From the IMG/VR virus record IMGVR_UViG_3300042889_001503, positions 62,001 to 126,000 of that record: a stretch of DNA of 64,000 nt; one strand, 5' to 3'. The notes below the pieces were generated by a model, which was not told the DNA's origin, ran no database searches, and saw only the letters and a program-made list of their open reading frames with translations. The position numbers and the translations under genes are program-made. Below, one piece after another: positions 5,149 through 20,350 of this stretch. How positions within the stretch are numbered: the first letter of the stretch is position 1; each line of letters opens with the position of its first letter.

Positions 5149-6216
5149 ATGTCAAATACAATAACGATACAAAGTATAAATTATAGTGGGGAGGTTGCAA
5201 ATATTTTGTTTAAACCTAACGGTGTTAATGTGGTTATAAATTTAGGTAATCAAATATTACCTTATGTGTTTAATCCGTCATTATTAACACCACCTCGTAA
5301 TGTATATGGTGTTTACACTATATTAGTTGAGGGGGCGGATTGTCCTGTTATTATGAATGTTCCGGTTCCTACTCCTACACCAACACCAACACCGACTGTT
5401 ACAAACACTCAAACACCGACAGCTACACCAACACTAACCCCAACTCCTTCTTTCAACCCTTGTAAAGTTCCTACACAAACACCAACAACCACCACTACAC
5501 CAACTACCACACCGACCCCAACAATAACACCTACGGAGACTTGTACGAACCCATGTGGATGTTACGCCCCAATACCACCAACACCAACACAAACACCAAC
5601 CAATACACACACTCCGACAAATACACCAACACCAACATTAACACCAACTCCGGTATATTATGCTAAGTTATTTATTGAACCTGTAAGTGGGTCTGAAAGT
5701 ATTGGTCAATGGATGTATGATAGTGGTTCTAATTTCTTTGGTTTTACAAACAATACACAACCAACACAAGACCAAACACAATTTAATATTGATATGAACA
5801 AATATGTTGATTTCAGTGGTTGGACTAGTGGTGAGTTCCCACCAATAATTAGTCAAACGGTTCCTCAAATTTCAGGAGGGCTCGATAGTTTTGGTAACCC
5901 AATAGTTGCCTATAATTTCTTAACAACCGAAGTGTTGCAAGGTTATGTTGGTGGTTTAGGGTGGTATATTTGGATTATCCCAATTTCATTAACTAATAAT
6001 GGAAGACAAACAATTATTGATTTTAATGAAAGTAATGATTCTAATTTATTAACAAATATATATACTGAAGATGCAATTAACACATATACATTTACCTACA
6101 CCGGAACAACAATTCCACAAACAACATACCGAGTTTATACAACATATCCTAACATAATATTTAACATTACCGATAACAATAATATTTATTTTAGAGGTAA
6201 TACCATAACACAATAA
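5149..6216 (+). CDS. Putative virion protein: ~70-aa N-terminal module, Pro/Thr linker, C-terminal beta-rich domain
   Basis: 355-aa ORF with long PT tracts, in the same operon as the adhesin-like genes. Confidence 0.6.
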   Translation: MSNTITIQSINYSGEVANILFKPNGVNVVINLGNQILPYVFNPSLLTPPRNVYGVYTILVEGADCPVIMNVPVPTPTPTPTPTVTNTQTPTATPTLTPTPSFNPCKVPTQTPTTTTTPTTTPTPTITPTETCTNPCGCYAPIPPTPTQTPTNTHTPTNTPTPTLTPTPVYYAKLFIEPVSGSESIGQWMYDSGSNFFGFTNNTQPTQDQTQFNIDMNKYVDFSGWTSGEFPPIISQTVPQISGGLDSFGNPIVAYNFLTTEVLQGYVGGLGWYIWIIPISLTNNGRQTIIDFNESNDSNLLTNIYTEDAINTYTFTYTGTTIPQTTYRVYTTYPNIIFNITDNNNIYFRGNTITQ

Positions 6217-6217
6217 T

Positions 6218-9200
6218 ATGAGTAATTTTTTAAATAACATACCAGTTTCACCTATAAAATCATTAGGTAATCCTTCTGTTCGTAATAACGCAACATTTGG
6301 AACAAATTTCAGTATCCTTCAAACAGGGGGGTATATGGAAGTTTACAATTTAACCGATTTAGATTACATAATCCCTAACGGTTATCAAGGTTTAGTTGAA
6401 TATTCCGGTAATACGATTCCGGTTCAGTTACAAATTGGGACGGGTCAAATTTTTTCACCTAATGTGTTAACATTAAATTCTGACAACATTTCTTCAGGTA
6501 GAAGAAAATTAGGGATGTTAGTTTATGTTTATGAAACCAAAAAAATATATCAATACAATATTGATAATTATGATACGTTATGGAACAACGCTACCGGAGC
6601 AACAGGTCCGGGGGGTTCTACAGTAGTTATATCAAATTTTGGAACAACGGTTAAAAATAACTCACCTGAAGGTATTGTGTTAATTAATGCTTGGACGGCA
6701 TCAACAATATCAGGTATTAATGGTTATGACGATACAAACGCTTCTTGGAGAGTTCTTCAAACATTTACCGGAGGAACAGTAACGGGAGCAACAATATTTA
6801 CAGATGGTTTAACTGCAAACACAATATCGGCAACAACATATCAAAATTTGCCTGCAACACCTTTCTTACCATTATCAGGAGGAACAGTGACCGGAGCAAC
6901 AATATTTACAGATGGTTTAACTGCAAACACAATTTCCGCAACAACATATCAAAATTTGCCTGCAACACCTTTCTTACCATTATCAGGAGGAACAGTAACG
7001 GGAGCAACAATATTTACAGATGGTTTAACTGCAAACACAATTTCCGCAACAACATATCAAAATTTGCCTGCAACACCTTTCTTACCATTATCAGGAGGAA
7101 CAGTAACGGGAGCAACAATATTTACAGATGGTTTAACCGCAAACACAATTTCGGCAACAACATATTATAATTTACCAAAAGACGTTTTTATTACCGGAGG
7201 AACATATTTCCAAGGCAACACTATTTTTACAAATAGTACAGGTGGTACTTTTAATATTTTTGGACCATCTAATTATGACCCGGGAGTTATTAGTGGTAAC
7301 ACAGGTTGGTCAAGTAATAATGACGGGTCAATTAATTTACCGCAGATAACGGTTGCATTATACGACAACCCTAATTTTTTTGAGCCTCTTAAATTTTATT
7401 CAATTTCAAGCGGAACCACAGGTGTCGGGTCACTTCCGGCATTAATAAATAACGACACAAATTATATTATAATTGAATATAATAATGGGGTTCCTAGATA
7501 TAATGTTTTAGATAATGAGGGGACTGTTGATTTTAGTAGTATTCTATTATATATGATTGTCTATCGAACAAATAATTTTATTCACGTTTTAGAGTTTGGT
7601 GATGAGGGTGCGGGTTTACCAAGTAAATTAAATGAACGTATTGTATATACAGATAGATTCGCGAGAGAAAGTGGTTGTTCGTTAGGTTTAAGTGGAAGTA
7701 CAGGTATTGTAACCTTATCTTCAGGTGTTGTTTGGAACGCCACTAATCGTCAAATAGTTAATGACACAACTTCATTAGGACTTTTTTTTAGAAATTTCCA
7801 TTCAGGCGGTACGTGGGTTTATACCACAACAGCAAATACAATTAATAATCTTTACTATGATAATGGTACTGATTTAGTATCAGCAACCGCAGGAAAATAT
7901 TTAGTTAATTGGTATTTTAGAGGACAAGAATTAAATGACCACTTATATGAGGTGGTTAGTGATGGACAATTCGATAATATATTATTAGCGGACGCTTCAA
8001 GTGAACCAAATTTACCTGAACTAATTACATCACACACATTTTTGGTTGGTAGGATTATTATTGAGGTAAGTGCGACAACAGGTATTACACAGTCGGCATT
8101 TTCATCAGTATTTCAACCAAGTGGTGCTCCCGGAGTTCACAATGATTTAACGAACATACAAGGAGGTCTTCCTAACCAATATTATCATTTAGATTCAAAC
8201 AAATATAATAATTTAGCATTAACAAATATTGATAATAATTTTAGTGCGGGACAAACATTTGCATCAGGGTTAACTGCAACTACAATATCCGCAACAACAT
8301 ACCAAAATTTACCACCAACACCTTTCTTACCTTTATCAGGTGGAACGGTAACAGGTCAAGTAATACTAAAAAATAACTCGAGCCCATTAATAATCACAAC
8401 CGATAATTATAGTCCGGGGATATCAGGTAATATACTATTTTACGGGGATATCACGGGGTCAACTAATGGGAAGTCAATTAGTTCTAGGTCAAACGGGGGT
8501 GGAAATCCAGGGAATTTAATCCTTCAAGAATTAGGGAATGGTAATGTTGGTGTTAATACAAATGTTGTCAATCCAATATTAAATTTTAATTTAGATGTAA
8601 ACGGTACTTTTGGTGCGACATCAGTATCAGCAACAACTTATTTTAATTTACCGGCAACACCTTTCTTACCATTATCAGGAGGAACAGTGACAGGTGCAAC
8701 AAACTTTACAGGAGGTTTAACCGCCACTACTATTTCAGCAACAACATACCAAAATTTACCACCAACACCTTTCTTACCATTATCAGGAGGAACAGTAACG
8801 GGAGCAACAATATTTACAGGAGGTTTAACGGCAAATACAATATCCGCAACAACAATAAGTGGGGGAACTGTAGTTCTTAACTCAACCAATCTACCGTCAA
8901 CACCGATTGCTGTTTCAGCATTTACTGATGATTATAATAGAGTTACTCTATCACCCGGAGGTTCACCATCGTTAACCTACACAAATACAAATACAGGTGC
9001 TGGTAATGCAACAATAACGGCATCAACTTATTTAAATATTGCAAACGGAAATCCTGCGGGTCAGTCATACACTACGGTACCATTATCCGGTTTTAACTCA
9101 CCATTTAATCCAACATTATCATTAAATACTGTAAATGTTGAATGGTCATTTAATCTAAGAACAAATAGAAACACCATATTTCCAGGATTCTCAGCCGGTA

Positions 9201-10240
9201 CCTATGGAGCTGCAGTTGTTTTAGCGGGTACTAGTGGAACACTTCTGAATACCGGTAACGGATACGCATTAGTTTATGGTGGAACAGGAACAAGAAATTG
9301 GAGGTTAGTTAGATATACCAGTGGATTATTTGGTACTAGAACAGATATAATTTCAGGAGGTGTTTTCGCGGCAGGTACTAATTATGTTAGTGCAAGAATT
9401 GTATATACGCCATCAACAAATACTTGGACATACTATTTCAGAGACGATGGTGCAGTTGCGTGGGGTGACCCTACAACCGTAACAACATTAATTGGTAGTG
9501 CAGTTGATAGTACATACACGTCTAGTTTAATGAGTTCTCTTGGAGTATTCTTTAATTATTCAACCGCAGCAAATCAAAATTTACAATTTGATAATTTAGT
9601 TGTTAAACTAAACTCACCTTCTGTATTTACTCCTCAAAGTTATTTAACGTTGAAAAATTACGCAAATACTGAAGTATTTGATGTTAAAGATGATGGTTCA
9701 GTAACATCGACCGGACTTATATCATCAACCGGGGGTATCTCAGGAACAACAATTAGTGGTGGAACATATTTTGGTAATGGTAGTGCACTTACGTTGGGTC
9801 AATTTGGTACGATGATAACAGGTTCTACCTCATTACTCGTTACCAATACAACTACATTACTAACATTAATACCGGGATTGACCACTACAATAACTGTACC
9901 TACACAAACTATGGTTTGTATACAAACAAATGGTGGGGTTAATACCGTTGGAACCACAACAACTAGTGGTTCGGCAATTGATGTGGCATTAGTGGTGGAT
10001 GGTATTATATTACCCAACGGTGGATATCAAAGAATGTATGCCGACAACCCAACGGGAAATGCTACGGTAGGAAACTGGGTCGCAAATTGGAATATGTCGG
10101 TTATTATAACATTATCAGCAGGAATTCATACTGTTGAGGTTGATACAGCAACTGTTCAGGGTCAAAACGCCACGGTAAGTGGTGGTTTTGGAGCAATAAA
10201 CCAAGGCACATTAACAATAATGATATTAAAAAATACATAA
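6218..10240 (+). CDS. Tail-fibre-like protein with 36-aa repeats and a lectin-like domain shared with the first ORF
   Basis: 1340 aa, Gly/Thr/Ser-rich. Repeated FLPLSGGTVTG motif typical of phage fibre shafts. AFTDDYNR...NLQFDNL domain also present in the first ORF. Confidence 0.7.
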   Translation: MSNFLNNIPVSPIKSLGNPSVRNNATFGTNFSILQTGGYMEVYNLTDLDYIIPNGYQGLVEYSGNTIPVQLQIGTGQIFSPNVLTLNSDNISSGRRKLGMLVYVYETKKIYQYNIDNYDTLWNNATGATGPGGSTVVISNFGTTVKNNSPEGIVLINAWTASTISGINGYDDTNASWRVLQTFTGGTVTGATIFTDGLTANTISATTYQNLPATPFLPLSGGTVTGATIFTDGLTANTISATTYQNLPATPFLPLSGGTVTGATIFTDGLTANTISATTYQNLPATPFLPLSGGTVTGATIFTDGLTANTISATTYYNLPKDVFITGGTYFQGNTIFTNSTGGTFNIFGPSNYDPGVISGNTGWSSNNDGSINLPQITVALYDNPNFFEPLKFYSISSGTTGVGSLPALINNDTNYIIIEYNNGVPRYNVLDNEGTVDFSSILLYMIVYRTNNFIHVLEFGDEGAGLPSKLNERIVYTDRFARESGCSLGLSGSTGIVTLSSGVVWNATNRQIVNDTTSLGLFFRNFHSGGTWVYTTTANTINNLYYDNGTDLVSATAGKYLVNWYFRGQELNDHLYEVVSDGQFDNILLADASSEPNLPELITSHTFLVGRIIIEVSATTGITQSAFSSVFQPSGAPGVHNDLTNIQGGLPNQYYHLDSNKYNNLALTNIDNNFSAGQTFASGLTATTISATTYQNLPPTPFLPLSGGTVTGQVILKNNSSPLIITTDNYSPGISGNILFYGDITGSTNGKSISSRSNGGGNPGNLILQELGNGNVGVNTNVVNPILNFNLDVNGTFGATSVSATTYFNLPATPFLPLSGGTVTGATNFTGGLTATTISATTYQNLPPTPFLPLSGGTVTGATIFTGGLTANTISATTISGGTVVLNSTNLPSTPIAVSAFTDDYNRVTLSPGGSPSLTYTNTNTGAGNATITASTYLNIANGNPAGQSYTTVPLSGFNSPFNPTLSLNTVNVEWSFNLRTNRNTIFPGFSAGTYGAAVVLAGTSGTLLNTGNGYALVYGGTGTRNWRLVRYTSGLFGTRTDIISGGVFAAGTNYVSARIVYTPSTNTWTYYFRDDGAVAWGDPTTVTTLIGSAVDSTYTSSLMSSLGVFFNYSTAANQNLQFDNLVVKLNSPSVFTPQSYLTLKNYANTEVFDVKDDGSVTSTGLISSTGGISGTTISGGTYFGNGSALTLGQFGTMITGSTSLLVTNTTTLLTLIPGLTTTITVPTQTMVCIQTNGGVNTVGTTTTSGSAIDVALVVDGIILPNGGYQRMYADNPTGNATVGNWVANWNMSVIITLSAGIHTVEVDTATVQGQNATVSGGFGAINQGTLTIMILKNT
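6770..7170 (+). repeat. 108-bp near-perfect tandem repeat (~3.7 copies) encoding GGTVTGATIFTDGLTANTISATTYQNLPATPFLPLS
   Basis: Units start at 6770, 6878, 6986 and 7094. Further copies at about 8270-8355 and 8625-8855. Confidence 0.95.
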
Positions 10241-10241
10241 T

Positions 10242-10742
10242 ATGGAATATACAAATTGGAATTTTTTGACGATTGTTTTATATCAAAATATTTTAGAAAT
10301 AAATAGTCTTTTAATAATGAGAAGGGATATTAATACAATGGATAGTATTTCAGTTAAAAATCTATTGAATGACGTTTCTAATTCTATTGTGTTAGACGCA
10401 ATAAAAACACAAAATGGGATTTCCGATTGTAAGAATTGGGATGCAATCGAAATACGTTTATCGTTAAATGATGAAGTATATAAAAATTTTAAATCAACAA
10501 GAAGTGAATTTGACAACAATCAATTTGATTTAGGTTATTTTTTATATGACGCATTTGTTGCTTTATCATTAGACGATATTGATAATCAACAAATTTATAT
10601 ACCATCAGACACTCTTTATTCGGAAGAGTTAATTATTAACCAAAATGAAGAACCTATTTTTTCCGGTATAACAACTACATTTAAAACCGTTGATGGATTA
10701 ACTGTTGTAATTAAAAATGGGTTAGTAATTTCAATTGGTTAA
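10242..10742 (+). CDS. Hypothetical protein, possibly fibre-associated
   Basis: 166-aa ORF directly after the fibre gene, ending in the beta-rich segment FKTVDGLTVVIKNGLVISI. Confidence 0.45.
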   Translation: MEYTNWNFLTIVLYQNILEINSLLIMRRDINTMDSISVKNLLNDVSNSIVLDAIKTQNGISDCKNWDAIEIRLSLNDEVYKNFKSTRSEFDNNQFDLGYFLYDAFVALSLDDIDNQQIYIPSDTLYSEELIINQNEEPIFSGITTTFKTVDGLTVVIKNGLVISIG

Positions 10743-10773
10743 TTAGGACTATTTATTAAATAATGAATAGTTT

Positions 10774-13416
10774 ATGCAAGTAATTGAAATCACAAGTTTA
10801 TCCGGACATTCCCCATATAACATATCAATATGTGATATAACAAGAACGTATTGTTATGTTGTTGCGACAGCTGTCTCATCAGTCCCGTTAATTCTAAACA
10901 TACCAACAGAATTATCAGGTTCTCAAGAAGTCTTAGTGATAGTCACAGATAACATTGGTTGTGAAGAAATTCAATATCATTTTTGTGGTGAACCTGCTCC
11001 TAGTCAAACACCAACGACAACACCCACTCCCACACCAACAAATTCCGTTTGTAATTGTATCTCAATTGATAACCCTTTAGGGGTAACATTAAATTTTGGG
11101 TATACTCAATGTGACGGGACATTAATCTATGGTGAGATTTACTCGGCAACCACATTATATGTTTGTGGTCAATTTCCGTATGGTGATAGTGGATTAATAA
11201 TTCAGGTTTCATCTAATATTTGTGTTGGGGATGTTTGCCCCGGACCAACACCTACACCAACCACCACTCCGACACCCACTCCAACATTACCACCGATAGT
11301 TGGTTATTTTGAGGATAGTTGTGATTCATCAAACCAATTTACCTTATCAAACATACCAATATCATTTAGTCCTCTGTCAGGAGCGTATTATATTGAAAGT
11401 AGTGGTTTCATTGGATGTGCCACTTATGTTGTTAGTTCATCTACAAACAATTTCTATTCATTTATTGCGATGGGTTCTCAACCGAGTATTTACCATTGTC
11501 AGAAAGCCAATTTTATCTATCCGTGTCCAACATCAACACCCACACCAACACCTACACCATCAATAACACCATCGGTAACTCCGACTCATACACCTACACC
11601 AACTCCGACTCACACTCCCACACCAACAACACCTGTTAAGTATGTGTTGTTCCAAGTTCAATCTTGTTGTGCTAAAAAGATTATAAAATATATTATGTTA
11701 CCGTCTAACTTTTTACCGGGAACTGCGGTTGTCAATTCATTTGGTGAGTGTTTAGAAATTATTAGTGTATCTAAAATTGTGACTTGGGTAACCGATTTTT
11801 GGGACCACGGAACAACATACATTTTTTGTGAGGTATGTGTTAAATATCAAACTTGTAATCCTGTTATACCACCATCCTTTATCTCTGTTTGGAGAACAAC
11901 AACTATAAACGAATCAATTACATTACCATATGAAACTTCGGGGTTTTATTATGGAACAATTGATTGGGGTGATGGGGAAACCTCTAATAATATTTACGAT
12001 AATAGAACACACACATATGTAACTCCGGGTGATTATATAATAACAATAACAGGGACATTAATTGGGTGGTCGTTTGGTGTTAACCCTATTAGTAGAAATA
12101 AAATTAGAGAAGTTCTACAGTGGGGTTGTTTACGTTTGGGTAATAGTGGTTCGTATTTTTCTAATTGTAATAATTTATCATTATCAAATGTTACCGATGT
12201 TTTAGATTTAACGGGAACAAATAATTTATCTTATACGTTTGAGAATTGTACTAATTTAACAACAGTCCCTTTTATAAATTCTTGGAACACATCAAACGTA
12301 ACAAATATGCAAGGTATGTTTTTTGAGTGTCATAATTTTAATGACGACATATCAGGTTGGGATGTTAGTAATGTTACTGATATGGGAGCAATGTTTGATA
12401 ACACTTATTTATTTAATCAGCCAATTGGTGTTTGGGATGTATCAAATGTTCAATCTATAAGTTATATGTTCTTACAAAATACCGTTTTTAACCAAAATTT
12501 AAGTTCTTGGAATGTTGGTAGTGTTACTAATATGAAAGGAACTTTTAATGGTTGCACATCATTTAATAACGGTGGTTCACCAATGATTAGTGGTTGGACA
12601 ACATATAATGTTACTGATATGGGTGATATGTTCCCTTTAACACCATTTAACCAACCAATTAATTCTTGGGATGTTAGTAGTGTTACTAAAATGGATTATA
12701 TGTTTTATCAATCAACATCATTTAACCAACCATTATCGGGATGGAATGTAAGTAATGTTACAGATATGAATTATATGTTTAGTTTATCCCCATTTAATCA
12801 ATATATTAATTCTTGGGATGTATCAAATGTTACAACTATGGAAGGTATGTTCTTTTTTAACACAATATTCAACCAAAACCTTAATTCTTGGGATGTAAGT
12901 TCAGTAACTAATATGGATTATATGTTTTGGTTTGATTACGCATTTGATGGTAATATAACTAGTTGGGACACTTCTAATGTTACAACAATGAGATTAATGT
13001 TTGCTACGTGTAGTATTTTTAATCAAAATATTAGTGGTTGGAACGTTGGTAATGTAACAAATATGCAACAGATGTTTAACGGAGCAACACAATTCAATCA
13101 ACCTATTGGTTCTTGGAACGTTAGTAATGTGACTAATATGTCAAATATGTTTGGTTCAGTAGGATTTAATCAAAATATTGGTTCTTGGAACGTTACCGGC
13201 GTAACAAACTTTAATGGATTTATGAATGGTAAAACATTTAGTGATTACTCAACAACAAATCTTGACGCAATTTATAATGGATGGAGTTCTTTACCAACAT
13301 TAACCTCTGGAATTAACATTAATTTTGGAACAATTAAATATACTGCCGGTAGTTCAGCCGGTAGAGCAATTCTAACCGGAACGTATGGTTGGACAATTAT
13401 TGATGGTGGAATATAA
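10774..13416 (+). CDS. BspA/DUF285-repeat surface protein with Cys-rich modules, Pro/Thr linkers and a PKD-like domain
   Basis: 880 aa. More than 10 repeats of FNQ.I..W(D/N)VS.VT.M..MF, plus GTIDWGDG and PT tracts. Confidence 0.8.
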   Translation: MQVIEITSLSGHSPYNISICDITRTYCYVVATAVSSVPLILNIPTELSGSQEVLVIVTDNIGCEEIQYHFCGEPAPSQTPTTTPTPTPTNSVCNCISIDNPLGVTLNFGYTQCDGTLIYGEIYSATTLYVCGQFPYGDSGLIIQVSSNICVGDVCPGPTPTPTTTPTPTPTLPPIVGYFEDSCDSSNQFTLSNIPISFSPLSGAYYIESSGFIGCATYVVSSSTNNFYSFIAMGSQPSIYHCQKANFIYPCPTSTPTPTPTPSITPSVTPTHTPTPTPTHTPTPTTPVKYVLFQVQSCCAKKIIKYIMLPSNFLPGTAVVNSFGECLEIISVSKIVTWVTDFWDHGTTYIFCEVCVKYQTCNPVIPPSFISVWRTTTINESITLPYETSGFYYGTIDWGDGETSNNIYDNRTHTYVTPGDYIITITGTLIGWSFGVNPISRNKIREVLQWGCLRLGNSGSYFSNCNNLSLSNVTDVLDLTGTNNLSYTFENCTNLTTVPFINSWNTSNVTNMQGMFFECHNFNDDISGWDVSNVTDMGAMFDNTYLFNQPIGVWDVSNVQSISYMFLQNTVFNQNLSSWNVGSVTNMKGTFNGCTSFNNGGSPMISGWTTYNVTDMGDMFPLTPFNQPINSWDVSSVTKMDYMFYQSTSFNQPLSGWNVSNVTDMNYMFSLSPFNQYINSWDVSNVTTMEGMFFFNTIFNQNLNSWDVSSVTNMDYMFWFDYAFDGNITSWDTSNVTTMRLMFATCSIFNQNISGWNVGNVTNMQQMFNGATQFNQPIGSWNVSNVTNMSNMFGSVGFNQNIGSWNVTGVTNFNGFMNGKTFSDYSTTNLDAIYNGWSSLPTLTSGININFGTIKYTAGSSAGRAILTGTYGWTIIDGGI

Positions 13417-13469: not shown

Positions 13470-14717
13470 ATGAAGATATTTGTCCAAATTGCGTCCTATC
13501 GTGACCCCCAACTTATCCCAACAATTAAATCAATGTTGGAGAATGCAAAGAAACCTAAAAATTTAGTAATCGGTATTTGTCGTCAATATCATCCGGAAGA
13601 TGGTTTTGATAATTTATCAGAATTCAAAGGTGATAAACGTTTTAGAGTTATTGATGTTCTATACACCGAATCCAAAGGGGTTTGTTGGGCAAGAAACCAA
13701 GTTCAACAACTATATAAAGGTGAAGAATATACCTTACAAATCGATTCTCATATGAGATTTGAAAAAGATTGGGACGACACCCTAATCAAAATGGTTAAAC
13801 AACTTCAAAAGAAAGGATTTAAGAAACCTTTACTAACAGGTTATGTTTCTTCATTCGACCCGGACAATGACCCGGCAAGTAGAGTTAAAGAACCTTGGAG
13901 AATGGCTTTTGATAGATTTATACCGGAAGGTGCCGTCTTCTTTTTACCTGAAACAATTCCGGGGTGGGAAAATCTTAAAGAACCCGTTACCTCAAGATTT
14001 TACTCCGCCCATATGGCATTTACATTGGGACAATTTAGTGTCGAGGTTCAACACGACCCTGAATTCTATTTCCACGGAGAAGAAATCTCAATCGCTGTTA
14101 GAGCATTTACACACGGATACGATTTATTTCACCCACACAAAACTGTTATTTGGCACGAATATACTCGTAAGGGTAGAACCAAACAATGGGATGATGATAA
14201 AGAGTGGGGTAAGAAAAATGAATTATCTCATAAAAAGAATCGTCAACTATTTGGTATGGACGGTGAAGACGTTACAATGGACTTTAGTTTTTACGGGTTC
14301 GGAACTGAAAGAACTTTAAAAGATTATGAAATTTATTCAGGTCTTAAATTTTCAAATAGAGCTGTTCAACAATATACTTTAGATAAAAATTACGCACCTA
14401 ATCCTCAAATATTTGAAACTGAGGAAGAATGGTTGGCAAGTTACGCTAGTATCTTTAAACATTGTATCGACATTGGATTTTCTCAAGTTCCTGAAAAAGA
14501 TTACGAATTTTGGGTTGTTGCTTTCCACGATGAAAAAGATGAAACACTTTTTAGAAAAGATGCTGATATCAATGAGATTAATAATATGATGAGAGACCCT
14601 GATGGGTATTGTAAAGTTTGGAGAGATTTCCAAACTGTTCATAAACCAAAATACTGGGTTGTTTGGCCGTTTAGTAAGTCAAAAGGTTGGTGTGAAAGAA
14701 TAACAGGTAATTTGTAA
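13470..14717 (+). CDS. GT60-like (Pfam GlcNAc family) polypeptide N-acetylglucosaminyltransferase with an extra C-terminal domain
   Basis: IFVQIASYRDPQL, ESKGVCWAR..VQQLYKGEEY.LQIDSHMRF..DWD, FHGEEI..AVRAFTHGYDLFHP and WHEY match the Gnt1/Skp1-GlcNAc-transferase family signature. Confidence 0.85.
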   Translation: MKIFVQIASYRDPQLIPTIKSMLENAKKPKNLVIGICRQYHPEDGFDNLSEFKGDKRFRVIDVLYTESKGVCWARNQVQQLYKGEEYTLQIDSHMRFEKDWDDTLIKMVKQLQKKGFKKPLLTGYVSSFDPDNDPASRVKEPWRMAFDRFIPEGAVFFLPETIPGWENLKEPVTSRFYSAHMAFTLGQFSVEVQHDPEFYFHGEEISIAVRAFTHGYDLFHPHKTVIWHEYTRKGRTKQWDDDKEWGKKNELSHKKNRQLFGMDGEDVTMDFSFYGFGTERTLKDYEIYSGLKFSNRAVQQYTLDKNYAPNPQIFETEEEWLASYASIFKHCIDIGFSQVPEKDYEFWVVAFHDEKDETLFRKDADINEINNMMRDPDGYCKVWRDFQTVHKPKYWVVWPFSKSKGWCERITGNL

Positions 14718-14721
14718 AAAT

Positions 14722-15429
14722 ATGGAATATGCGATAGCAACATTTTGTTATGGTGATAGATATTATGCCCAAACAAATAGAATGATAGAATCATTTAAAG
14801 AATTTGAAGATAAACCAAATATTTTCATAGTTACAGATAATCCGGAATCAATTACTAAAGAAGATTATGTATTTGTTTCACATATTAAGGAATATAATGA
14901 AAAATATGTGACATATAATACGAATTATTATGATTTTGATTTTTCAGTTAAAAGATTCTCAGTAAAATTTGCGTTAGATAGTGGATTTACTAAAGTAATT
15001 TTAACAGATACGGATGTTATACCAAACAAATCATTATTCACAAAAAAAAATGTGTTAGAGTGTTTTATACCTAATAGTGTTGCCGGTCAAGTAACCTATC
15101 TTTTTGAAAAAGAGGTTGAGACAAATAGTATGTTAGGAAGACGATACTTACATTATGAAAATAAATTTGACGTTCAATATAATAAAGTGGATATGTGGAT
15201 GCCGGAAGACTGCATTCAATTTTTAGATATTGATAAAGATAAATTTTATTCATTTTTAAAAACTTGGGATGAATGTATTGAGATTAAATATGTTGACAAT
15301 TTATATAATATACCTGCGGGTAATATAGATGAAATGTGTTTCTCAGCATTACATAACGGTGTTGACTTAAAAAACAATTCTAGCAAACACATAAACTTAT
15401 TAATCCCCAATCACGACAAATGGTATTAA
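14722..15429 (+). CDS. Putative GT-A fold glycosyltransferase
   Basis: IATFCYG..Y, IFIVTD, VKRF, VILTDTD (DxD) and late GNIDE motif. Lies within the GT operon. Confidence 0.6.
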   Translation: MEYAIATFCYGDRYYAQTNRMIESFKEFEDKPNIFIVTDNPESITKEDYVFVSHIKEYNEKYVTYNTNYYDFDFSVKRFSVKFALDSGFTKVILTDTDVIPNKSLFTKKNVLECFIPNSVAGQVTYLFEKEVETNSMLGRRYLHYENKFDVQYNKVDMWMPEDCIQFLDIDKDKFYSFLKTWDECIEIKYVDNLYNIPAGNIDEMCFSALHNGVDLKNNSSKHINLLIPNHDKWY

Positions 15430-16265
15430 AAATTATTACATCAGTTTATGAATTAAACTATGAAGATTCCAGAGGTGGTATGGTATATAAATCATATCCA
15501 TTATTAACCCAAACATTACGTAGTATAATTTTTGAAGGTTTTGAATATGTTATTTACACTAATCAATACACTTACGACAAATATCATTTAGGTGAACAAT
15601 TTAACCAACCAAATGTAACCATAAAGTTTCACGAATTAAATTCTGAAAATTACCTAAACAACATAAACCCAATTAGATTAGTTAAATTTGCCGAAGGGGA
15701 AATTTACGATAGAATTTATTGTGTTAAAAATTATGTAGAAGTTATTTTTAATAAGTTACAATTTTTACTCGATGAGTGTGAAGATAATAAAAATGTTGTG
15801 TGGATTGATTCCGGACTTTTTGGAACTAGTTGTCACGATAGATGGAGAGATTACATTAATGTTTTTGCCCATTCAGAATTATTTTTAAATAAAATAAATG
15901 AAAAAATATCTGAGAATGGTTTTATTTGTTTAAGAGGAGAATCAATTCAGGTTAATTACGAATTAAAAGCAGTTCTTGTTAATATGTTTAACACAGACTT
16001 TAAGTTAGTTCCCGGAGGTATGTTTGGAGGGACAAGTGAGTCTATTCAAAAAGTTTTATCTAATTACTTATCGATTTTTGAAACATATTACACAACAACA
16101 GGTAAATTAATTAGTGAACAAGAGGTTTTATCTATATTAACTCACACAAATGACGTTAAATTTTTTAATTTTGGTGATTGGTTAGATTTACAAAGAGGGA
16201 TATTGGACCTTATGGATTTATTGGATGTCGACAAATATAAAATTGATGAGAAATATGATGTCTAA
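15420..16265 (+). CDS. Divergent HtrL/YibB (WlaTC)-like glycosyltransferase
   Basis: VVWIDSG, GGMFGG and SEQEVL motifs parallel FWIDAG, AGFFGG and TEESLF in the 16821 ORF. Confidence 0.6.
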   Translation: MVLKIITSVYELNYEDSRGGMVYKSYPLLTQTLRSIIFEGFEYVIYTNQYTYDKYHLGEQFNQPNVTIKFHELNSENYLNNINPIRLVKFAEGEIYDRIYCVKNYVEVIFNKLQFLLDECEDNKNVVWIDSGLFGTSCHDRWRDYINVFAHSELFLNKINEKISENGFICLRGESIQVNYELKAVLVNMFNTDFKLVPGGMFGGTSESIQKVLSNYLSIFETYYTTTGKLISEQEVLSILTHTNDVKFFNFGDWLDLQRGILDLMDLLDVDKYKIDEKYDV

Positions 16266-16824
16266 CTATTCTTTTAACATTGTTTGCACAACTATTGGAA
16301 GAGAATCATTACCAAGATTGATTGATAGTTTTAAAAATCAGTTAACCCAAAACGATTCTTTTACCATAATATCCGATACAAATCACGAGTTTGTTCAAAA
16401 TGTTTTATCTAATTATGATGTTAATTTTAAATTAAATCACATTATAAATGATGGGGATAGATTAGGTAAGTTTGGACACCCTTTATTAAACAAACACATT
16501 AATAACCTTGACGGTGATTTTATTATGTTTGCGGACGACGATGATTATTATGTTGATGATGCCTTTGAGTATATAAGGGAAGTCGTTACAGAAAAAAAAC
16601 TATACATTTTTAAACATAAATGGGGAGGAACAATTAATTGGACGACAAAAGAAGTAACACTAGGGAATATTGGTAAATGTATGGGTGTCATTCCTAATAC
16701 TAAAAATTTACCAATGTTTCAAGAAGACGTATTCGGGGATGGGTTATTTTACGAAGACTTATCCAAAATTATGGAATATGAATTTGTTGATAAAATAATA
16801 TATAAAATTAGAGATACAATATGA
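16255..16824 (+). CDS. GT2-like glycosyltransferase
   Basis: IVCTTIGRESLPRLIDS, IISD and FIMFADDDDYY. ATG at 16255/16258 overlaps the upstream stop and is a likelier start than 16225. Confidence 0.7.
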   Translation: MMSNYSFNIVCTTIGRESLPRLIDSFKNQLTQNDSFTIISDTNHEFVQNVLSNYDVNFKLNHIINDGDRLGKFGHPLLNKHINNLDGDFIMFADDDDYYVDDAFEYIREVVTEKKLYIFKHKWGGTINWTTKEVTLGNIGKCMGVIPNTKNLPMFQEDVFGDGLFYEDLSKIMEYEFVDKIIYKIRDTI

Positions 16825-18494
16825 GTAAAGTAACATTAGTGACAGGATTATGGGATATAGGTAGAGGAGACCTTCAAGAGGGTTGGTCTCGTTCATTCCA
16901 ACATTATTTAGATAAATTTCAACAACTATTACAAGTTGATGTGAATATGATTATTTTTGGTGACGAAGAGTTAGAGAAATTTGTGTCAAACAATAGACGA
17001 AGTGAAAACACACAATTTGTTCGTAGAAGTTTGTCTTGGTTTAAAGACAACGATTTTTTTGATAAAATACAAAATATAAGAACAAATCCGGATTGGTATA
17101 ATCAAGTCGGATGGTTAACCGATTCAACTCAAGCTAAATTAGAGATGTATAACCCGTTGGTTATGTCAAAAATTTATCTCCTACACGATGCTAAAATTTT
17201 AGATAGGTTTAATTCAGAATATATGTTTTGGATTGACGCTGGGTTAACAAATACAATTCACCCGGGATATTTTACACACGATAAGGTTTTAGATAAATTA
17301 CCTCAATTAGTTAAAAATTTTCATTTTGTTTGTTTCCCTTATGAAACTAATTCTGAAATCCACGGATTTAAATATCCTGAATTATGTGAATTAGCCGGAG
17401 AACCAGTTAAAATGGTTGCTCGAGCAGGTTTCTTCGGAGGAAGAAAAGATGTTATATCAGATATTAACGGTATCTATTACGGGTTAATGAATGATACATT
17501 ATCACAAGGGTTAATGGGAACTGAAGAATCGTTATTTACAATTATGACATACAAATACCCTGAGTTGATTAGTTATTCAGAAATAGAAGATAATGGATTA
17601 ATGGGTAAATTTTTTGAGGACTTAAAAAATAACACGACTCAAGTTAAAGAAAGTGTTTTACCAATTAAACCGAATAGTTTAGACACATCCAAAGTTGGAT
17701 TGTATGTTATAGCATTTAACTCACCTAAACAATTTGAGGTATTAATCCAATCTATGTTAGATTATGATTCTGACTTTATTGATAAACCAAAAAAATTCTT
17801 ATTAGATAACTCAACCGATTTATCAACAACACCAAGATATCTTGAACTATGTGAACAATATGGTTTTGAACATATTAAAAAAGACAACATTGGTATTGTC
17901 GGGGGGAGAGTGTTTGTTGCTGAACATTTTGATGAAACTGATTTAGATTGTTATTGGTGGTTTGAAGACGATATGGCTTTTTATCCAAAAAAAGGTGAGG
18001 TATGTAGAAATGGGTTCCCTCGTTTTGTTGATAAATTATATCAAAAATCAGTAGAGATTGTTAAAAAAGAAAATTTTGATTTTCTTAAATTAAATTTTAG
18101 TGAATTTTTTGGTGATAATAGTGTTCAATGGAGTTGGTATAATGTCCCTCAAGATTTTAGACAATCTCATTGGCCGAATAACCCTAAATTACCGGTTCAA
18201 GGACTAGACCCTAATTCACCTAAAACACAATTTAAGGAGATAAGGACATATAAAGGGTTATCATATGCGACAGGGGAAGTTTATTTATGTAATTGGCCGA
18301 TAATATTAACAAGAGAAGGTAACTATAAGTGTTATTTAGAAACAAAATGGGCTCACCCATTTGAACAGACGTTAATGTCTTATTGTTATCAAGAAACTGT
18401 TAAAGGAAAAATTAATCCGGGATTATTGTTATTAACACCAACGGAACACGATAGATTTGAACATTATGACGGTTCATTAAGAAAAGAAAGTTAA
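16821..18494 (+). CDS. Two-domain glycosyltransferase: HtrL/YibB-like N-terminal domain plus GT-A C-terminal domain
   Basis: TLVTGLWDIGR, RSFQHYL..F..LL, MSK..LL and FWIDAG in the first domain. LYVIAFNSP, LLDNS and WWFEDD in the second. Confidence 0.75.
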   Translation: MSKVTLVTGLWDIGRGDLQEGWSRSFQHYLDKFQQLLQVDVNMIIFGDEELEKFVSNNRRSENTQFVRRSLSWFKDNDFFDKIQNIRTNPDWYNQVGWLTDSTQAKLEMYNPLVMSKIYLLHDAKILDRFNSEYMFWIDAGLTNTIHPGYFTHDKVLDKLPQLVKNFHFVCFPYETNSEIHGFKYPELCELAGEPVKMVARAGFFGGRKDVISDINGIYYGLMNDTLSQGLMGTEESLFTIMTYKYPELISYSEIEDNGLMGKFFEDLKNNTTQVKESVLPIKPNSLDTSKVGLYVIAFNSPKQFEVLIQSMLDYDSDFIDKPKKFLLDNSTDLSTTPRYLELCEQYGFEHIKKDNIGIVGGRVFVAEHFDETDLDCYWWFEDDMAFYPKKGEVCRNGFPRFVDKLYQKSVEIVKKENFDFLKLNFSEFFGDNSVQWSWYNVPQDFRQSHWPNNPKLPVQGLDPNSPKTQFKEIRTYKGLSYATGEVYLCNWPIILTREGNYKCYLETKWAHPFEQTLMSYCYQETVKGKINPGLLLLTPTEHDRFEHYDGSLRKES

Positions 18495-18530
18495 TTCTAT
18501 ATTTTGAAGTATTTATAAATAAAAACTTTA

Positions 18531-19217
18531 ATGGAATTTTTTATAAAGAAAAACGCAACCTTACCTCTTCTTAAACTTCAAGTAGTAAAAGATGGTAGAA
18601 GTGATTACAATAATTTTATGGAATTATTGGAATCCTCAACCATATTCTTTTCTATGGTTAATTCTGAGACAGGTATTCCAAAAATAACTTCAAGACCAGC
18701 GGGGTTTGTTGAAAAAATATTTGACGACCCCAATGCAGAACCTGAATATTATATTTACTATCAATTTACCAAACAAGACACGAGTGTTGAGGGTAGAAAT
18801 GAAGGACAATTTTTAATAAAGACATCTGACGGTAATATAATATTACCAATTAGGGAAAAACTAAACATATATATTCAAGAGTCATTTATTGCTGACGATT
18901 TAGAATATGATACTTGCTACACATCAGTTTATCCTTGTTGTGTATCACATTCTGTTATACCACAACCACCATCACTTGTATATTTTAATTATGAATTAAT
19001 TAAAGACAAAGATTTTATTTATAAAACAATCCCTAATAATAATTTAGATGACGATGTTATACCAAATAACGATATTATAACGAGTAATATTCCTGACAAT
19101 AATTTAGGTGATGACATCATACCAAATAACAATATTATAACAAATAGTATTCCTGATAATAATTTAGGTGATGATATAATCCCAAATAATGATATTATAT
19201 CAAACATTTTACTTTAA
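18531..19217 (+). CDS. Putative structural protein (BppU-like N-terminal beta domain) with an Asn/Asp/Ile repeat tail
   Basis: FFIKKNATLPLLKLQV...YYQF...DT..EG..EGQF.I...G.IILP pattern followed by three 20-aa repeats. Confidence 0.5.
   Translation: MEFFIKKNATLPLLKLQVVKDGRSDYNNFMELLESSTIFFSMVNSETGIPKITSRPAGFVEKIFDDPNAEPEYYIYYQFTKQDTSVEGRNEGQFLIKTSDGNIILPIREKLNIYIQESFIADDLEYDTCYTSVYPCCVSHSVIPQPPSLVYFNYELIKDKDFIYKTIPNNNLDDDVIPNNDIITSNIPDNNLGDDIIPNNNIITNSIPDNNLGDDIIPNNDIISNILL
19029..19208 (+). repeat. 60-bp tandem repeat x3 (IPDNNLGDDIIPNNNIITSN-like)
   Basis: Units start at 19029, 19089 and 19149, each with an internal 30-bp periodicity (IPxNN). Confidence 0.9.
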
Positions 19218-19273
19218 CTTTTTTAAAGTGTTTGATATTTATAAATAAATAAAAAAAAACAAAAAAAATAATT

Positions 19274-20347
19274 ATGTCAATAGGTTTAAGAATTATCAGT
19301 AATAATTTAATAGGTAAAACCGCGTCTGTTACCTTTACTCCAGCATCCGGAGGGACACCACAAAATTTAGGTATTCAGACAATACCATTTAATAATATTA
19401 CACCATATCCATATGGTAATTATGATATTAATGTTTTAGAATATAACTATAGTTACAATTTTAATGTGCCGGCGCCGGCTCCATTACAATCAGGTTATAC
19501 AACTACCCTTAGAGGTATTGTTAATCCGGAAGGTGGTTTAGCATATTCTTCGTCAACGTTATCGGAATCTTGGGGTGAGTATACAAAAGGATTTATTACT
19601 AGTAAAGGTTATTCCCCTGATGATATTATTTACGCCGAAGGTATATGTTCTGATGATGTTGATGGTCCCGTATTTACAGGTGTTGATAATATTGGACAAT
19701 TTCCAACTTCTATGAACACATTTCTTGGTCCGTTTATGTCAGGTGGTTTAGCAGGGTTCCCATTTGTTGGAACTGTTGGGTTAGGTGCTTGGGCTAGCCA
19801 CATTACAAGTGGCGGAACTTTATTTATAACAAGTACACCTCATATTGGTGTAACAATAGATGGTCGTGCGGGAAGAATGTTAAGAAAAGGTAAACCAGAT
19901 AGTATCACAGATAATACTTGTGGAGCTGTGGCGGGAGCCATAGGTGAGGTATTAACAACTTGGAGTGCTACCACACCAACATTTAGTACTTATTCAGGTT
20001 CAGGAGATTATGAATTTTATAAGTTAGTTGATATCTTATGGCCGTTTCGTGGTACATTATCAGGATTTACGGGAACATCGGAAGAAATATATAATAAACA
20101 AATGATTTTTTCAACAAATAAAATTAAAGAAAACGCATTTACTTATTTATTTGCTAATTTATCGGGAGCAACAAATAGTGTGTTATTATCAAGACCTTCT
20201 ACTGAGATATTTTTCACTAGTGGTGTTTTTATTAATACAGATTATGGATATGAATCATACGTTAATATCGACCAATTTTGGAAATATAGTATTAACGGTG
20301 GTTGGGTTGACCTAACATCAGAATATGTTTCAGGATTACCATTATAA
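19274..20347 (+). CDS. LCIB/LCIC-family beta-type carbonic anhydrase fused to an N-terminal virion-protein-like module
   Basis: GICSDD (C125, D127), GPF.SGGLAGFPFVG.VGLGAWASH, PHIG (H190), G..G...R.G (R204) and TCGA (C216) give the Cys/His/Cys zinc-ligand pattern of the LCIB family. Confidence 0.8.
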   Translation: MSIGLRIISNNLIGKTASVTFTPASGGTPQNLGIQTIPFNNITPYPYGNYDINVLEYNYSYNFNVPAPAPLQSGYTTTLRGIVNPEGGLAYSSSTLSESWGEYTKGFITSKGYSPDDIIYAEGICSDDVDGPVFTGVDNIGQFPTSMNTFLGPFMSGGLAGFPFVGTVGLGAWASHITSGGTLFITSTPHIGVTIDGRAGRMLRKGKPDSITDNTCGAVAGAIGEVLTTWSATTPTFSTYSGSGDYEFYKLVDILWPFRGTLSGFTGTSEEIYNKQMIFSTNKIKENAFTYLFANLSGATNSVLLSRPSTEIFFTSGVFINTDYGYESYVNIDQFWKYSINGGWVDLTSEYVSGLPL

Positions 20348-20350
20348 AAC

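What the first reader, a model, noticed from the sequence alone, without database searches (positions are those of the whole stretch)
5149..19485. Shared ~70-aa N-terminal module may be a virion docking tag for unrelated cargo
Seen: 5149 begins ITIQSINYSGEVANILFKP...NLGNQILPY...YGVYTILV...NVPVPTP and 19274 begins LRIISNNLIGKTASVTFTP...NLGIQTIPF...YGNYDINV...NVPAPAP. The consensus is I.S.N..G..A...F.P....NLG.Q..P....YG.Y.I.V....NVP.P.P. The downstream parts are unrelated. Inference: a plug-in domain that attaches different payloads, through a Pro-rich linker, to the capsid or tail.
Basis: partly seen in the sequence, partly recalled or inferred. Interest (0 to 1): 0.65.

Follow-up and report, generated by a model that had tools for sequence, protein, structure and literature searches.

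The report
Shared N-terminal module on phage proteins
Two proteins of an uncultured 272-kb lake phage, and hundreds of proteins in related phages, start with the same small beta-sandwich domain followed by a flexible stalk and unrelated "payload" domains; this looks like a common attachment handle for displaying different proteins on the virus particle, but no attachment has been shown.

Summary
Window 5149-6216 (355 aa) and 19274-20347 (357 aa) share a ~68-aa N-terminal domain. Each scores 57-65 bits against a profile of 100 independent relatives; the best shuffled control scores 13 bits.

The genome is a T4-like jumbo myophage from lake water. It holds six copies of the module. A scan of 1.84 billion proteins finds 534 clusters.
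- The module starts at residue 1 in 146 of 149 top hits.
- A Pro/Thr linker follows in 121 of 149.
- The cargo falls into at least 37 unrelated groups, mostly adhesin- or lectin-like.

AlphaFold2 gives a confident six-strand beta-sandwich with only generic Ig/FN3-like matches. There is no Pfam or PHROG family, and the module is absent from the nearest database phages.

One window cargo is an LCIB-type beta-carbonic-anhydrase domain with an invariant Cys-Asp-His-Cys site. The other cargo has an unknown fold. Both fusions are conserved in more than 100 relatives.

The "virion docking tag" reading is the best explanation, at about 0.45, but it is only inferred. The support is:
- no signal peptide;
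- cargo of extracellular type;
- four paralogs between the terminase and portal genes;
- a late-promoter-like motif before the second gene.

A co-fold with the capsid protein gave no answer.

The parts
5149..6216 (+). Gene of the first module protein (P0001, 355 aa): module, PT linker, conserved C-terminal domain of unknown fold
   Evidence: ORF and translation. The cargo is 63-75% identical in more than 300 clusters, and 113 of 120 listed relatives carry the module; the other 7 are fragments that start inside the linker.
5149..5364 (+). N-terminal module of P0001 (aa 1-72)
   Evidence: 56.8 bits against the independent family profile, versus 9.6 for the best shuffle. AlphaFold2 model with pLDDT 87: six-strand beta-sandwich.
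5365..5652 (+). Pro/Thr-rich linker (about aa 73-168), with a few Cys
   Evidence: Translation. Tandem 6- and 18-nt repeats at 5479-5648. Linker length ranges from 44 to 122 aa among orthologs.
5653..6213 (+). Cargo domain of P0001 (aa 169-355), beta-rich, no known family
   Evidence: No Pfam hit and only a weak PHROG hit on the linker. No usable Atlas hit. AlphaFold2 model too poor to use, pLDDT 50.
19274..20347 (+). Gene of the second module protein (P0002, 357 aa): module, short PAPAP hinge, LCIB-type beta-carbonic-anhydrase domain
   Evidence: The full-length fusion is conserved at 52-93% identity in the 120 best of 245 clusters, on contigs up to 320 kb, and 119 of 119 carry the module.
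19274..19477 (+). N-terminal module of P0002 (aa 1-68)
   Evidence: 65.1 bits against the independent family profile, versus 12.9 for the best shuffle.
19568..20269 (+). LCIB_C_CA domain (aa 99-332)
   Evidence: Pfam PF18599, E 4.6e-27, 95 bits against a cut-off of 25. PDB 6kfs, E 1.2e-16, and PtLCIB4 5b5y. C125, D127, H190 and C216 are invariant in 120 of 120 orthologs.
19236..19249 (+). Late-promoter-like 14-mer TATTTATAAATAAA, 24 nt upstream of the P0002 start codon
   Evidence: Exact copies also precede the prohead protease gene and a gene beside the portal gene; one-mismatch copies precede the sheath gene. There are 22 sites genome-wide against about 5 in shuffles.
18510..18523 (+). Second exact copy of the same 14-mer, 7 nt upstream of the 228-aa gene (18531-19217), which is a conserved neighbour of the module-LCIB gene
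   Evidence: The neighbour is conserved in G001, L053 and L061.
2..5134 (+). Context: 3' part of a 1856-aa DUF285/BspA-like repeat protein with PT linkers; it ends 14 nt before P0001
   Evidence: PHROG repeat families. Full ORF at G000 61564-67134. PT runs.
6218..10240 (+). Context: 1340-aa fibre-like protein with 36-aa tandem repeats; its start codon lies 1 nt after the P0001 stop
   Evidence: ORF list. 108-nt repeats at 6770-7173 (96% matches) and 8625-8854. No family.
10774..13416 (+). Context: 880-aa DUF285 protein that carries a different ~75-aa N-terminal module, PT linkers and a Cys-rich internal module
   Evidence: Pfam DUF285, E 7e-125. Its N-terminus is similar to G000 154583 and 150727; its Cys-rich module is shared with G000 13829 and 21884.
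13470..18494 (+). Context: glycosyltransferase island between the two module genes. It holds a PF11397 GlcNAc-transferase, a GT2 and an HtrL_YibB-like protein, plus two ORFs with no family hit
20473..23262 (+). Context: family-B DNA polymerase, the conserved right-hand neighbour of the module-LCIB gene
   Evidence: Same synteny in L053, L061 and G001.

Best explanation
The two proteins belong to a large, so far undescribed family from uncultured T4-like jumbo phages of lakes. The family is defined by a ~68-aa N-terminal beta-sandwich module. Most likely the module is a common attachment handle. It would bind a repeated site on the assembled particle (capsid surface, neck or tail). The Pro/Thr stalk that usually follows would hold the variable C-terminal payload away from the surface; the stalk may be O-glycosylated by the phage's own glycosyltransferases. 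Payloads are mostly adhesin- or lectin-like, and in one window protein an LCIB-type carbonic anhydrase. New payloads would be acquired by recombination in or next to the linker.

Shown here:
- the homology of the module;
- its strict N-terminal position;
- the linker;
- the diversity and swapping of cargo;
- purifying selection on the module;
- the predicted fold.

Inferred, not shown: that the proteins are in the virion and that the module is what holds them there.
For: 1. The module is real and constrained.
- It scores 57-65 bits against an independent profile.
- Among orthologs it is as conserved as the cargo: 73.5% versus 71.3% for P0001, and 60.3% versus 57.7% for P0002. The linker meanwhile varies from 44 to 122 aa.

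2. The module is position-specific and modular.
- 534 clusters have E<=1e-3.
- 146 of 149 top hits start with it.
- 121 of 149 have a PT linker, and there are at least 37 BLAST-unlinked cargo groups among 113.
- 11 of 84 proteins with the P0001 cargo carry another module subtype.
- At the syntenic locus of a related phage (L053), a P0002-type module sits on a different 700-aa protein.

3. The module is the only element these proteins share, and it begins at Met1 with no signal peptide. Yet the recognisable cargo is of extracellular binding type: DUF285/BspA LRR, Laminin_G_3, a beta-propeller, Fib_succ_major, PKD, F5/8-C, phage tail collar. For such proteins, leaving the cell as part of the particle is the simplest route.

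4. Gene context.
- Four of the six copies form a tight same-strand block between the large terminase and the T4-type portal, upstream of the protease and major capsid genes.
- Relatives have terminase directly followed by portal, so this block is an insertion into the head operon.
- In L050 a module gene lies among homologues of the genes downstream of the baseplate wedge.
- P0001 sits 14 nt after a 1856-aa DUF285 protein and 1 nt before a 1340-aa repeat protein.

5. P0002 has its own exact copy of a 14-mer containing the T4 late-promoter consensus TATAAATA. The prohead protease gene has the same exact copy, and one-mismatch copies precede the sheath gene.

6. The model is a confident small Ig-like sandwich, pLDDT 87. 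This fold is common in phage surface proteins.
Against: - There is no direct evidence that any family member is in a virion. No cultured phage carries the module, so no proteome or structure exists.
- No partner was identified. The one co-fold tried, with a single capsid subunit, gave no answer and counts neither way.
- The fold is generic, with Z no higher than 6.
- The six modules of one genome are only 30-39% identical to the first window copy. That is odd if they all compete for one site.
- The P0002 cargo looks like an active enzyme, and it has no obvious job on a particle.
- The window genes lie in a variable island with glycosyltransferases, and P0002 is next to the DNA polymerase. Context alone does not make them structural.
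- A late promoter also fits non-structural late proteins.
Confidence: 0.45

Rival explanations
1. The module is a carbohydrate-binding (CBM-like) or weak surface-adhesion domain. It targets the attached domain to a glycan, for example host envelope polysaccharide or the phage's own glycosylated proteins, in the way CBM, PT linker and catalytic domain are arranged in glycoside hydrolases. It may or may not be part of the particle.
For: - Size, all-beta fold and several conserved Tyr residues.
- The PT linker, which is the classical architecture of CBM-bearing enzymes (established knowledge).
- Many glycosyltransferases are encoded next to the genes.
- Some cargo is enzyme-like: LCIB carbonic anhydrase, an arabinofuranosidase-like hit, and a papain-like peptidase on one relative.
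Against: - No sequence or fold match to any CBM family.
- Most recognisable cargo is itself a binding domain, so a second binding domain is not needed for targeting.
- A CBM has no reason to be strictly N-terminal and single-copy.
- Without a signal peptide the proteins reach a cell surface only after lysis.
Confidence: 0.2
2. The module is an N-terminal oligomerisation or folding-nucleation domain. An example would be a cap that brings chains together for fibre assembly. Alternatively it is simply the conserved 5' end that lets cargo cassettes be exchanged by recombination. In either case it has no docking role of its own.
For: - Strict N-terminal position.
- Cargo and module subtypes are reshuffled.
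- Conserved Cys residues in most members could form inter- or intra-chain disulfides.
Against: - PT linkers and LRR, lectin or carbonic-anhydrase cargo are not typical of coiled or trimeric fibre shafts.
- Module-only proteins of 69 aa exist, one in this genome and one elsewhere.
- The module is under protein-level constraint as strong as the cargo, which a mere recombination site would not need.
- Oligomerisation was not tested.
Confidence: 0.15
3. The module is a targeting signal for packaging into the head (internal or ejected proteins), or for a host compartment after infection. The cargo then acts inside the host cell rather than on the particle surface.
For: - Four genes lie in the head-gene cluster next to a T4-type prohead protease.
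- T4 uses N-terminal capsid-targeting sequences (established knowledge).
- An intracellular carbonic anhydrase would make physiological sense.
Against: - T4-type targeting sequences are about 10 aa and are cleaved. This is a folded 68-aa domain with no conserved protease motif.
- Long PT stalks and 1000-aa LRR or lectin proteins are unlikely head contents.
- Adhesin-like cargo points outward.
Confidence: 0.08
4. The similarity is chance or compositional and there is no shared module.
For: The pairwise BLASTP E-value is only 0.005.
Against: - The profile scores are four to six times the best of 2000 shuffles.
- There are six copies in the genome and 534 clusters elsewhere.
- The fold is confident and consistent.
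Confidence: 0.01

Closest known systems
Phage T5 decoration protein pb10 (and, with reversed polarity, T4 Hoc)
   Same: A small N-terminal domain anchors the protein to the capsid, and a linker holds an exposed domain outward. Foreign cargo fused to the anchor still binds (PMC5292684, PMC10766600). This is the mechanism proposed here.
   Different: - No sequence or fold match of the module to pb10 or Hoc was found.
- pb10 and Hoc are single genes per phage with a fixed Ig-like payload. Here one genome has six paralogs, and the family has dozens of payload types and long PT stalks.
- Capsid binding is demonstrated for pb10 and not for this module.
Conserved N-terminal anchor domains of phage tail fibres and tailspikes with exchangeable receptor-binding C-termini
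   Same: A conserved N-terminus with a variable, horizontally exchanged distal part, and several paralogs per genome sharing the N-terminus (established knowledge of phage receptor-binding proteins). The gene neighbourhood is one of large fibre-like proteins.
   Different: - Known anchors belong to trimeric fibres with shafts. Here the module is a 68-aa Ig-like domain followed by a disordered PT stalk.
- The payloads include LRR, lectin-like and enzyme domains.
- No Pfam or PHROG tail-fibre family matches the module.
Dockerin-cohesin and CBM / PT-linker / catalytic-domain architectures of cellulolytic bacteria
   Same: A module of about 70 aa joined by a Pro/Thr linker to many unrelated domains, serving to place them on a scaffold or substrate (established knowledge).
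   Different: - Dockerins are Ca-binding helical repeats, usually C-terminal, on secreted proteins. This module is all-beta and N-terminal, and the proteins have no signal peptide.
- No cohesin-like partner was found.
Type IX secretion C-terminal domains (Por_Secre_tail)
   Same: A beta-sandwich tag of about 70-80 aa on unrelated cargo. Several such domains are among the best structural matches (Z 5.1-6.0; 7pq4).
   Different: - The T9SS tag is C-terminal and its proteins carry a Sec signal peptide. This module is at residue 1 and there is no signal peptide.
- There is no Pfam match.
- Z values of 5-6 are at background level for this library.
LCIB/LCIC family of beta-carbonic anhydrases (cargo of the second protein only)
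   Same: - Pfam PF18599 above its cut-off.
- Aligns with the solved LCIB-family structures 6kfs and PtLCIB4 5b5y.
- The Cys-Asp...His...Cys residues are invariant in 120 orthologs.
   Different: - It is fused to the phage N-terminal module and encoded by jumbo phages.
- No paper in the searched library links LCIB to phages.
- Activity is untested.

Membership tests
The N-terminal module family itself (unnamed; no Pfam or PHROG entry) | Significant match to a profile built from independent members | tested here: met
   56.8 and 65.1 bits against a maximum of 9.6 and 12.9 in 2000 shuffles each. All six genome copies have E of 1e-29 or better, though those six copies are the seed of that profile.
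The N-terminal module family itself (unnamed; no Pfam or PHROG entry) | Module at the extreme N-terminus, followed by a Pro/Thr-rich linker or hinge and a variable C-terminal part | tested here: met
   146 of 149 at the N-terminus and 121 of 149 with a PT linker. P0001 has a linker of about 96 aa; P0002 has only a PAPAP hinge.
Capsid decoration proteins with an anchor domain (T5 pb10-like, T4 Hoc-like) | Sequence or fold homology of the anchor to a known decoration-protein anchor | tested here: not met
   No Pfam or PHROG hit. PDB and BFVD searches give only generic Ig/FN3-like matches with Z no higher than 6.
Capsid decoration proteins with an anchor domain (T5 pb10-like, T4 Hoc-like) | Binding to the assembled capsid | not testable with these tools
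   The co-fold with one capsid subunit gave no verdict. A hexamer exceeds the size limit. No particles or proteome are available.
Phage tail-fibre or tailspike N-terminal anchors | Match to a known fibre anchor family, or a trimeric fibre architecture | tested here: not met
   No tail-fibre family matches the module. One of 101 cargoes has a phage tail collar domain. Oligomeric state was not tested.
Type IX secretion C-terminal domain (Por_Secre_tail) | C-terminal position on a protein with an N-terminal Sec signal peptide, plus a Pfam match | tested here: not met
   The module starts at Met1 with no signal peptide. No Pfam hit even at E up to 10. There is only a background-level fold resemblance.
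Dockerin | Duplicated Ca-binding helical motif, with a cohesin partner | tested here: not met
   The predicted fold is all-beta. No Pfam hit. No partner was identified.
Pfam DUF7061 (PF23200) | Score above the curated cut-off over most of the 232-position model | tested here: not met
   11.9 bits against a cut-off of 27, covering only positions 31-62.
LCIB/LCIC beta-carbonic anhydrase (cargo of P0002) | Pfam PF18599 above its gathering score | tested here: met
   95.2 bits against a cut-off of 25, covering 6-216 of 223 positions.
LCIB/LCIC beta-carbonic anhydrase (cargo of P0002) | Zinc-site residues (Cys, His, Cys with a neighbouring Asp) retained | tested here: met
   The CSD, PH and CG motifs align with those of the solved structure 6kfs. 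C125, D127, H190 and C216 are invariant in 120 of 120 sequences. That these are the metal ligands is taken from knowledge of the family, not measured here.
LCIB/LCIC beta-carbonic anhydrase (cargo of P0002) | CO2 hydration activity | not testable with these tools
   Needs an enzyme assay.

The most novel reading that the evidence does not exclude
A lineage of lake jumbo phages uses a viral "dockerin-like" display system. One small N-terminal beta-sandwich plugs up to six different proteins per genome into repeated sites on the particle. The proteins sit on mucin-like Pro/Thr stalks glycosylated by the phage's own GT60-type polypeptide GlcNAc-transferase. The displayed set includes adhesins, and also a catalytically active LCIB-type carbonic anhydrase. 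That would be an enzyme carried on, or delivered by, a virion.
Probability: 0.25. Interest if true: 0.8.

Novelty: new variant of a known kind. Interest (0 to 1): 0.55.

Why it matters
If the module is a particle-binding handle, it defines a natural plug-and-display system. A 68-aa tag would carry proteins from 69 to over 1700 aa, including an enzyme, onto a phage. That is useful for phage display and vaccine scaffolds in the way T5 pb10 and T4 Hoc are.

It would also explain how abundant uncultured lake phages diversify their surface adhesins, and so probably their host range, by cassette exchange.

Independently of the docking question, three results stand:
- a new, large domain family that databases do not cover;
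- a conserved phage-encoded LCIB-type carbonic anhydrase with an intact metal site, a class not previously linked to phages in the literature searched;
- a likely link between phage glycosyltransferases and mucin-like stalks.

Tried and rejected
- **Family scans.** Pfam and PHROGs on the module gave nothing usable. The weak DUF7061 hit (11.9 bits, cut-off 27) was rejected.
- **Fold searches with the module model.** Foldseek against PDB and BFVD, and VIA-align against 48,161 chains, gave only generic Ig/FN3/usher/T9SS-CTD-like matches at background level, Z no higher than 6.
- **Cultured or deposited phages.** tblastn of a module and of the whole P0002 against 50,697 GenBank phage records found no match. 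Profile searches of the nearest database phages by capsid protein found nothing: Microcystis phage Mel-JY01, Flavobacterium phage immuto, and two huge uncultured phages.
- **Cellular genomes.** A pattern scan of GTDB genomes with one module found no relative, but this scan finds only close relatives.
- **Co-fold.** Module with the 623-aa major capsid protein gave "no answer", score 0.00. This is evidence neither way, and a capsid hexamer is beyond the size limit.
- **P0001 cargo.** AlphaFold2 with 62 homologues reached only pLDDT 50, so no fold search was made. The ESM Atlas gave no usable hit.
- **T4-type cleavable capsid-targeting signal.** Considered and rejected: there is no conserved cleavage motif, and the module is a folded domain.
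- **Literature.** No paper links LCIB to phages. Papers on DUF285 in phages and giant viruses give no virion data.
- **RNA libraries.** Contigs from freshwater RNA libraries cover parts of P0002. They cannot prove transcription or show its level.

No alternative genetic code was needed.

Full report
**What the window is.** The window is bases 62,001-126,000 of a 272,437-bp IMG/VR virus record, linear and estimated 91% complete. It is about 32% G+C, with tightly packed genes mostly on one strand.

Hallmark genes show a T4-like jumbo myophage:
- large terminase and T4-type portal;
- prohead protease;
- gp23-like major capsid protein;
- tail sheath and baseplate wedge;
- family-B DNA polymerase;
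- a gp13-like neck protein.

The closest database phages by capsid protein are only about 40-46% identical: Microcystis phage Mel-JY01, Flavobacterium phage immuto and huge uncultured phages. Fourteen lake-water metagenome runs hold the second gene in full.

**Checking the observation.** The two ORFs are as described. BLASTP aligns only residues 1-76 with 1-70 (34% identity, E 0.005), and nothing else.

Searching the whole genome with the first module found four more copies outside the window:
- G000 17021, 803 aa;
- G000 19416, 744 aa;
- G000 21654, a 69-aa protein that is the module alone;
- G000 21884, 1040 aa.

A profile of the six was run against 1.84 billion representative proteins. It found 534 clusters at E<=1e-3 and 349 at E<=1e-10.

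As a clean significance test I built a profile from 100 of these, each under 45% identical to either window copy. The two window N-termini score 56.8 and 65.1 bits, against 9.6 and 12.9 for the best of 2000 shuffles each. The shared module is therefore real.

**Anatomy of the family.**
- Among the 149 best hits the module starts at residue 1-10 in 146.
- 121 have a Pro/Thr-type linker of at least 12 aa after it, with a median of 52 aa.
- Protein lengths run from 69 to 1727 aa among hits that carry the whole module.
- After masking linkers, 113 cargoes of at least 80 aa fall into 37 groups unlinked by BLAST.
- Pfam recognises few of the cargoes. Those it does recognise are binding or adhesion domains: DUF285/BspA-type LRR, Laminin_G_3, a beta-propeller, Fib_succ_major, PKD, F5/8 type C, Y_Y_Y, and one phage tail collar.
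- The module has no Pfam or PHROG family. The weak DUF7061 signal fails that family's cut-off.
- With a 149-row alignment AlphaFold2 gives a confident model (pLDDT 87, pTM 0.72) of a six-strand beta-sandwich.
- Structure searches return only generic Ig/FN3, usher-middle-domain and T9SS-CTD-like sandwiches with Z no higher than 6, which is background for that library. Two uncharacterised proteins of uncultured Caudovirales are the best viral matches.

**The two window proteins.** P0001 consists of the module (1-72), a PT linker of about 96 aa, and a 187-aa C-terminal domain.
- That domain is 63-75% identical in more than 300 clusters, on contigs up to 308 kb.
- 113 of 120 listed relatives carry the module. 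The other seven are fragments beginning inside the linker.
- Its fold stays unknown: AlphaFold2 reached pLDDT 50 and the Atlas gave nothing.

P0002 consists of the module (1-68), a short PAPAP hinge, and an LCIB-type beta-carbonic-anhydrase domain.
- Pfam PF18599 matches at E 4.6e-27, and PDB 6kfs at E 1.2e-16.
- C125, D127, H190 and C216 are invariant in all 120 orthologs examined.
- The full-length fusion is conserved in at least 245 clusters, and 119 of 119 listed carry the module.
- It keeps its place just upstream of the DNA polymerase and the gp13-like gene in related 250-320-kb contigs.

Across orthologs the module is as conserved as the cargo: 73.5% versus 71.3%, and 60.3% versus 57.7%. 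Linker length floats from 44 to 122 aa. In 11 of 84 cases the same P0001-type cargo carries a different module subtype. At the syntenic locus of another phage, a P0002-type module sits on an unrelated 700-aa protein. Module and cargo are thus exchanged independently.

**Context.** Four of the six copies form a same-strand block with gaps of a few bases, together with a 1062-aa DUF285 protein. The block lies between the terminase and the portal, upstream of the protease and capsid genes. In Mel-JY01 and in a 335-kb relative (G001, capsid 60% identical) the terminase is directly followed by the portal. The block is therefore an 11-kb insertion into the head operon.

G001 has a single module gene elsewhere, flanked by 1200-1600-aa proteins. 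Other relatives have one or two module genes. In L050 a module gene lies among homologues of the genes downstream of the baseplate wedge.

In the window, P0001 is wedged between a 1856-aa DUF285 protein and a 1340-aa protein with 36-aa tandem repeats. An island of glycosyltransferases separates it from P0002.

P0002 has, 24 nt upstream of its start, an exact copy of the 14-mer TATTTATAAATAAA. This contains the T4 late-promoter consensus. Exact copies precede the prohead protease gene and a gene beside the portal, and one-mismatch copies precede the sheath gene. There are 22 sites in the genome against about 5 in shuffles, and 16 of them lie just upstream of a gene.

**Interpretation.** The module is the only thing these proteins share. 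It is always first, it is under selection, and it starts at Met1 without a signal peptide. The stalks and payloads, however, look extracellular. Some of the genes sit in or beside structural operons, and one has a late-type promoter.

This is how T5 pb10 works, with an N-terminal capsid anchor, a linker and an exposed domain; cargo fusions still bind (PMC5292684, PMC10766600). It is also how tail-fibre anchors work.

None of this is shown. No relative is cultured and no proteome exists. The fold is generic. The single co-fold possible within the size limit, module plus one capsid subunit, returned no answer. I put the docking reading at about 0.45.

The rivals are:
- a CBM-like glycan-binding module, about 0.2;
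- an oligomerisation or cassette-exchange N-terminus, about 0.15;
- a packaging or host-targeting signal, under 0.1.

**Comparison and novelty.** The principle of a conserved N-terminal anchor with an exchangeable distal domain is known for phage fibres and decoration proteins. It resembles dockerin or CBM architectures and, by fold only, T9SS sorting domains. Membership in each of these was tested and not met (see the table).

What is new:
- the domain family itself;
- its scale, and its restriction so far to uncultured lake jumbo phages;
- the mucin-like stalks next to a PF11397 (GT60-type) polypeptide GlcNAc-transferase, whose eukaryotic relatives make GlcNAc-O-Thr on mucins (PMC9472816);
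- an apparently intact carbonic anhydrase among the payloads.

I rate it a new variant of a known kind, of moderate interest, with a clear experimental path.

Noticed in passing
window 13470-18494 (also G000 49913-58409, outside the window): A run of glycosyltransferase genes lies between the two module genes. It includes a PF11397 GlcNAc-transferase (E 2.5e-70), a GT2 and an HtrL_YibB-like protein. PF11397 is, from my own knowledge, the CAZy GT60 family; its eukaryotic relatives add GlcNAc to Thr of mucins (PMC9472816). Ten proteins of this genome have Pro/Thr stalks. The stalks may be O-glycosylated by the phage. A 77%-identical transferase sits next to module genes on another contig (L041).
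   Followed up: partly
window 19236-19249 and 18510-18523; G000 2381, 26959, 28453, 38217(-), 150724(-); near-copies at window 30503-30520: A 14-mer, TATTTATAAATAAA, contains the T4 late-promoter consensus. It lies 5-27 nt upstream of P0002, its 228-aa neighbour, the prohead protease gene and a gene beside the portal. One-mismatch copies precede the sheath gene. It is probably the late promoter of this phage lineage.
   Followed up: partly
window 10774-11010; G000 154583-154825(-) and 150727-151299(-): There is a second, unrelated N-terminal module of about 75 aa. It heads the 880-aa DUF285 protein and a 190-aa PT-stalk protein, and occurs alone as an 80-aa ORF (BLASTP E 3e-6 and 7e-4). The phage seems to use at least two such N-terminal handles.
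   Followed up: partly
window 11299-11502; G000 13829 (aa 177-252) and 21884 (aa 201-290): A Cys-rich internal module of about 75 aa, flanked by PT linkers, is shared by three large proteins (51% and 34% identity). This is further evidence of domain shuffling at the linkers.
   Followed up: partly
window 19568-20269: This is a phage-encoded LCIB-type beta-carbonic-anhydrase domain with invariant Cys/Asp/His/Cys residues. It is conserved in at least 245 clusters of jumbo-phage proteins. No paper in the library links LCIB to phages. Its role in a phage is unexplained.
   Followed up: partly
G000 13829-25006 (outside the window): An 11-kb block sits between the terminase and portal genes. It holds a DUF285 protein, three module proteins and a module-only ORF. 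These two genes are adjacent in Mel-JY01 and in the 335-kb relative G001.
   Followed up: yes
G000 21654-21863 (outside the window): A 69-aa ORF consists of the module alone plus the first residues of a linker. A 69-aa counterpart exists elsewhere (P0010). It could be a remnant, or a payload-free plug for the same site.
   Followed up: no
window 6770-7173 and 8625-8854: The 1340-aa protein downstream of P0001 contains 108-nt (36-aa) tandem repeats: 3.7 copies at 96% matches, and again 2.1 copies. It is fibre-like and has no family.
   Followed up: no
window 19038-19204: 60-nt tandem repeats (2.8 copies, 85% matches) lie at the 3' end of the 228-aa gene. The homologues of this gene in relatives are only 117-123 aa.
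   Followed up: no
window 30541-34134; G000 31137-33008: The sheath (1197 aa) and major capsid protein (623 aa) are much longer than the parts matched by their families. Sheath hits cover residues 907-1195, and capsid hits cover 372-600. Both probably carry extra surface domains, which are candidate docking sites.
   Followed up: no
window 19589-20323: Contigs from four freshwater or lake RNA libraries cover parts of P0002, some with only 1 mismatch in 151-256 nt. This is compatible with transcription in nature, but DNA carry-over cannot be excluded.
   Followed up: partly
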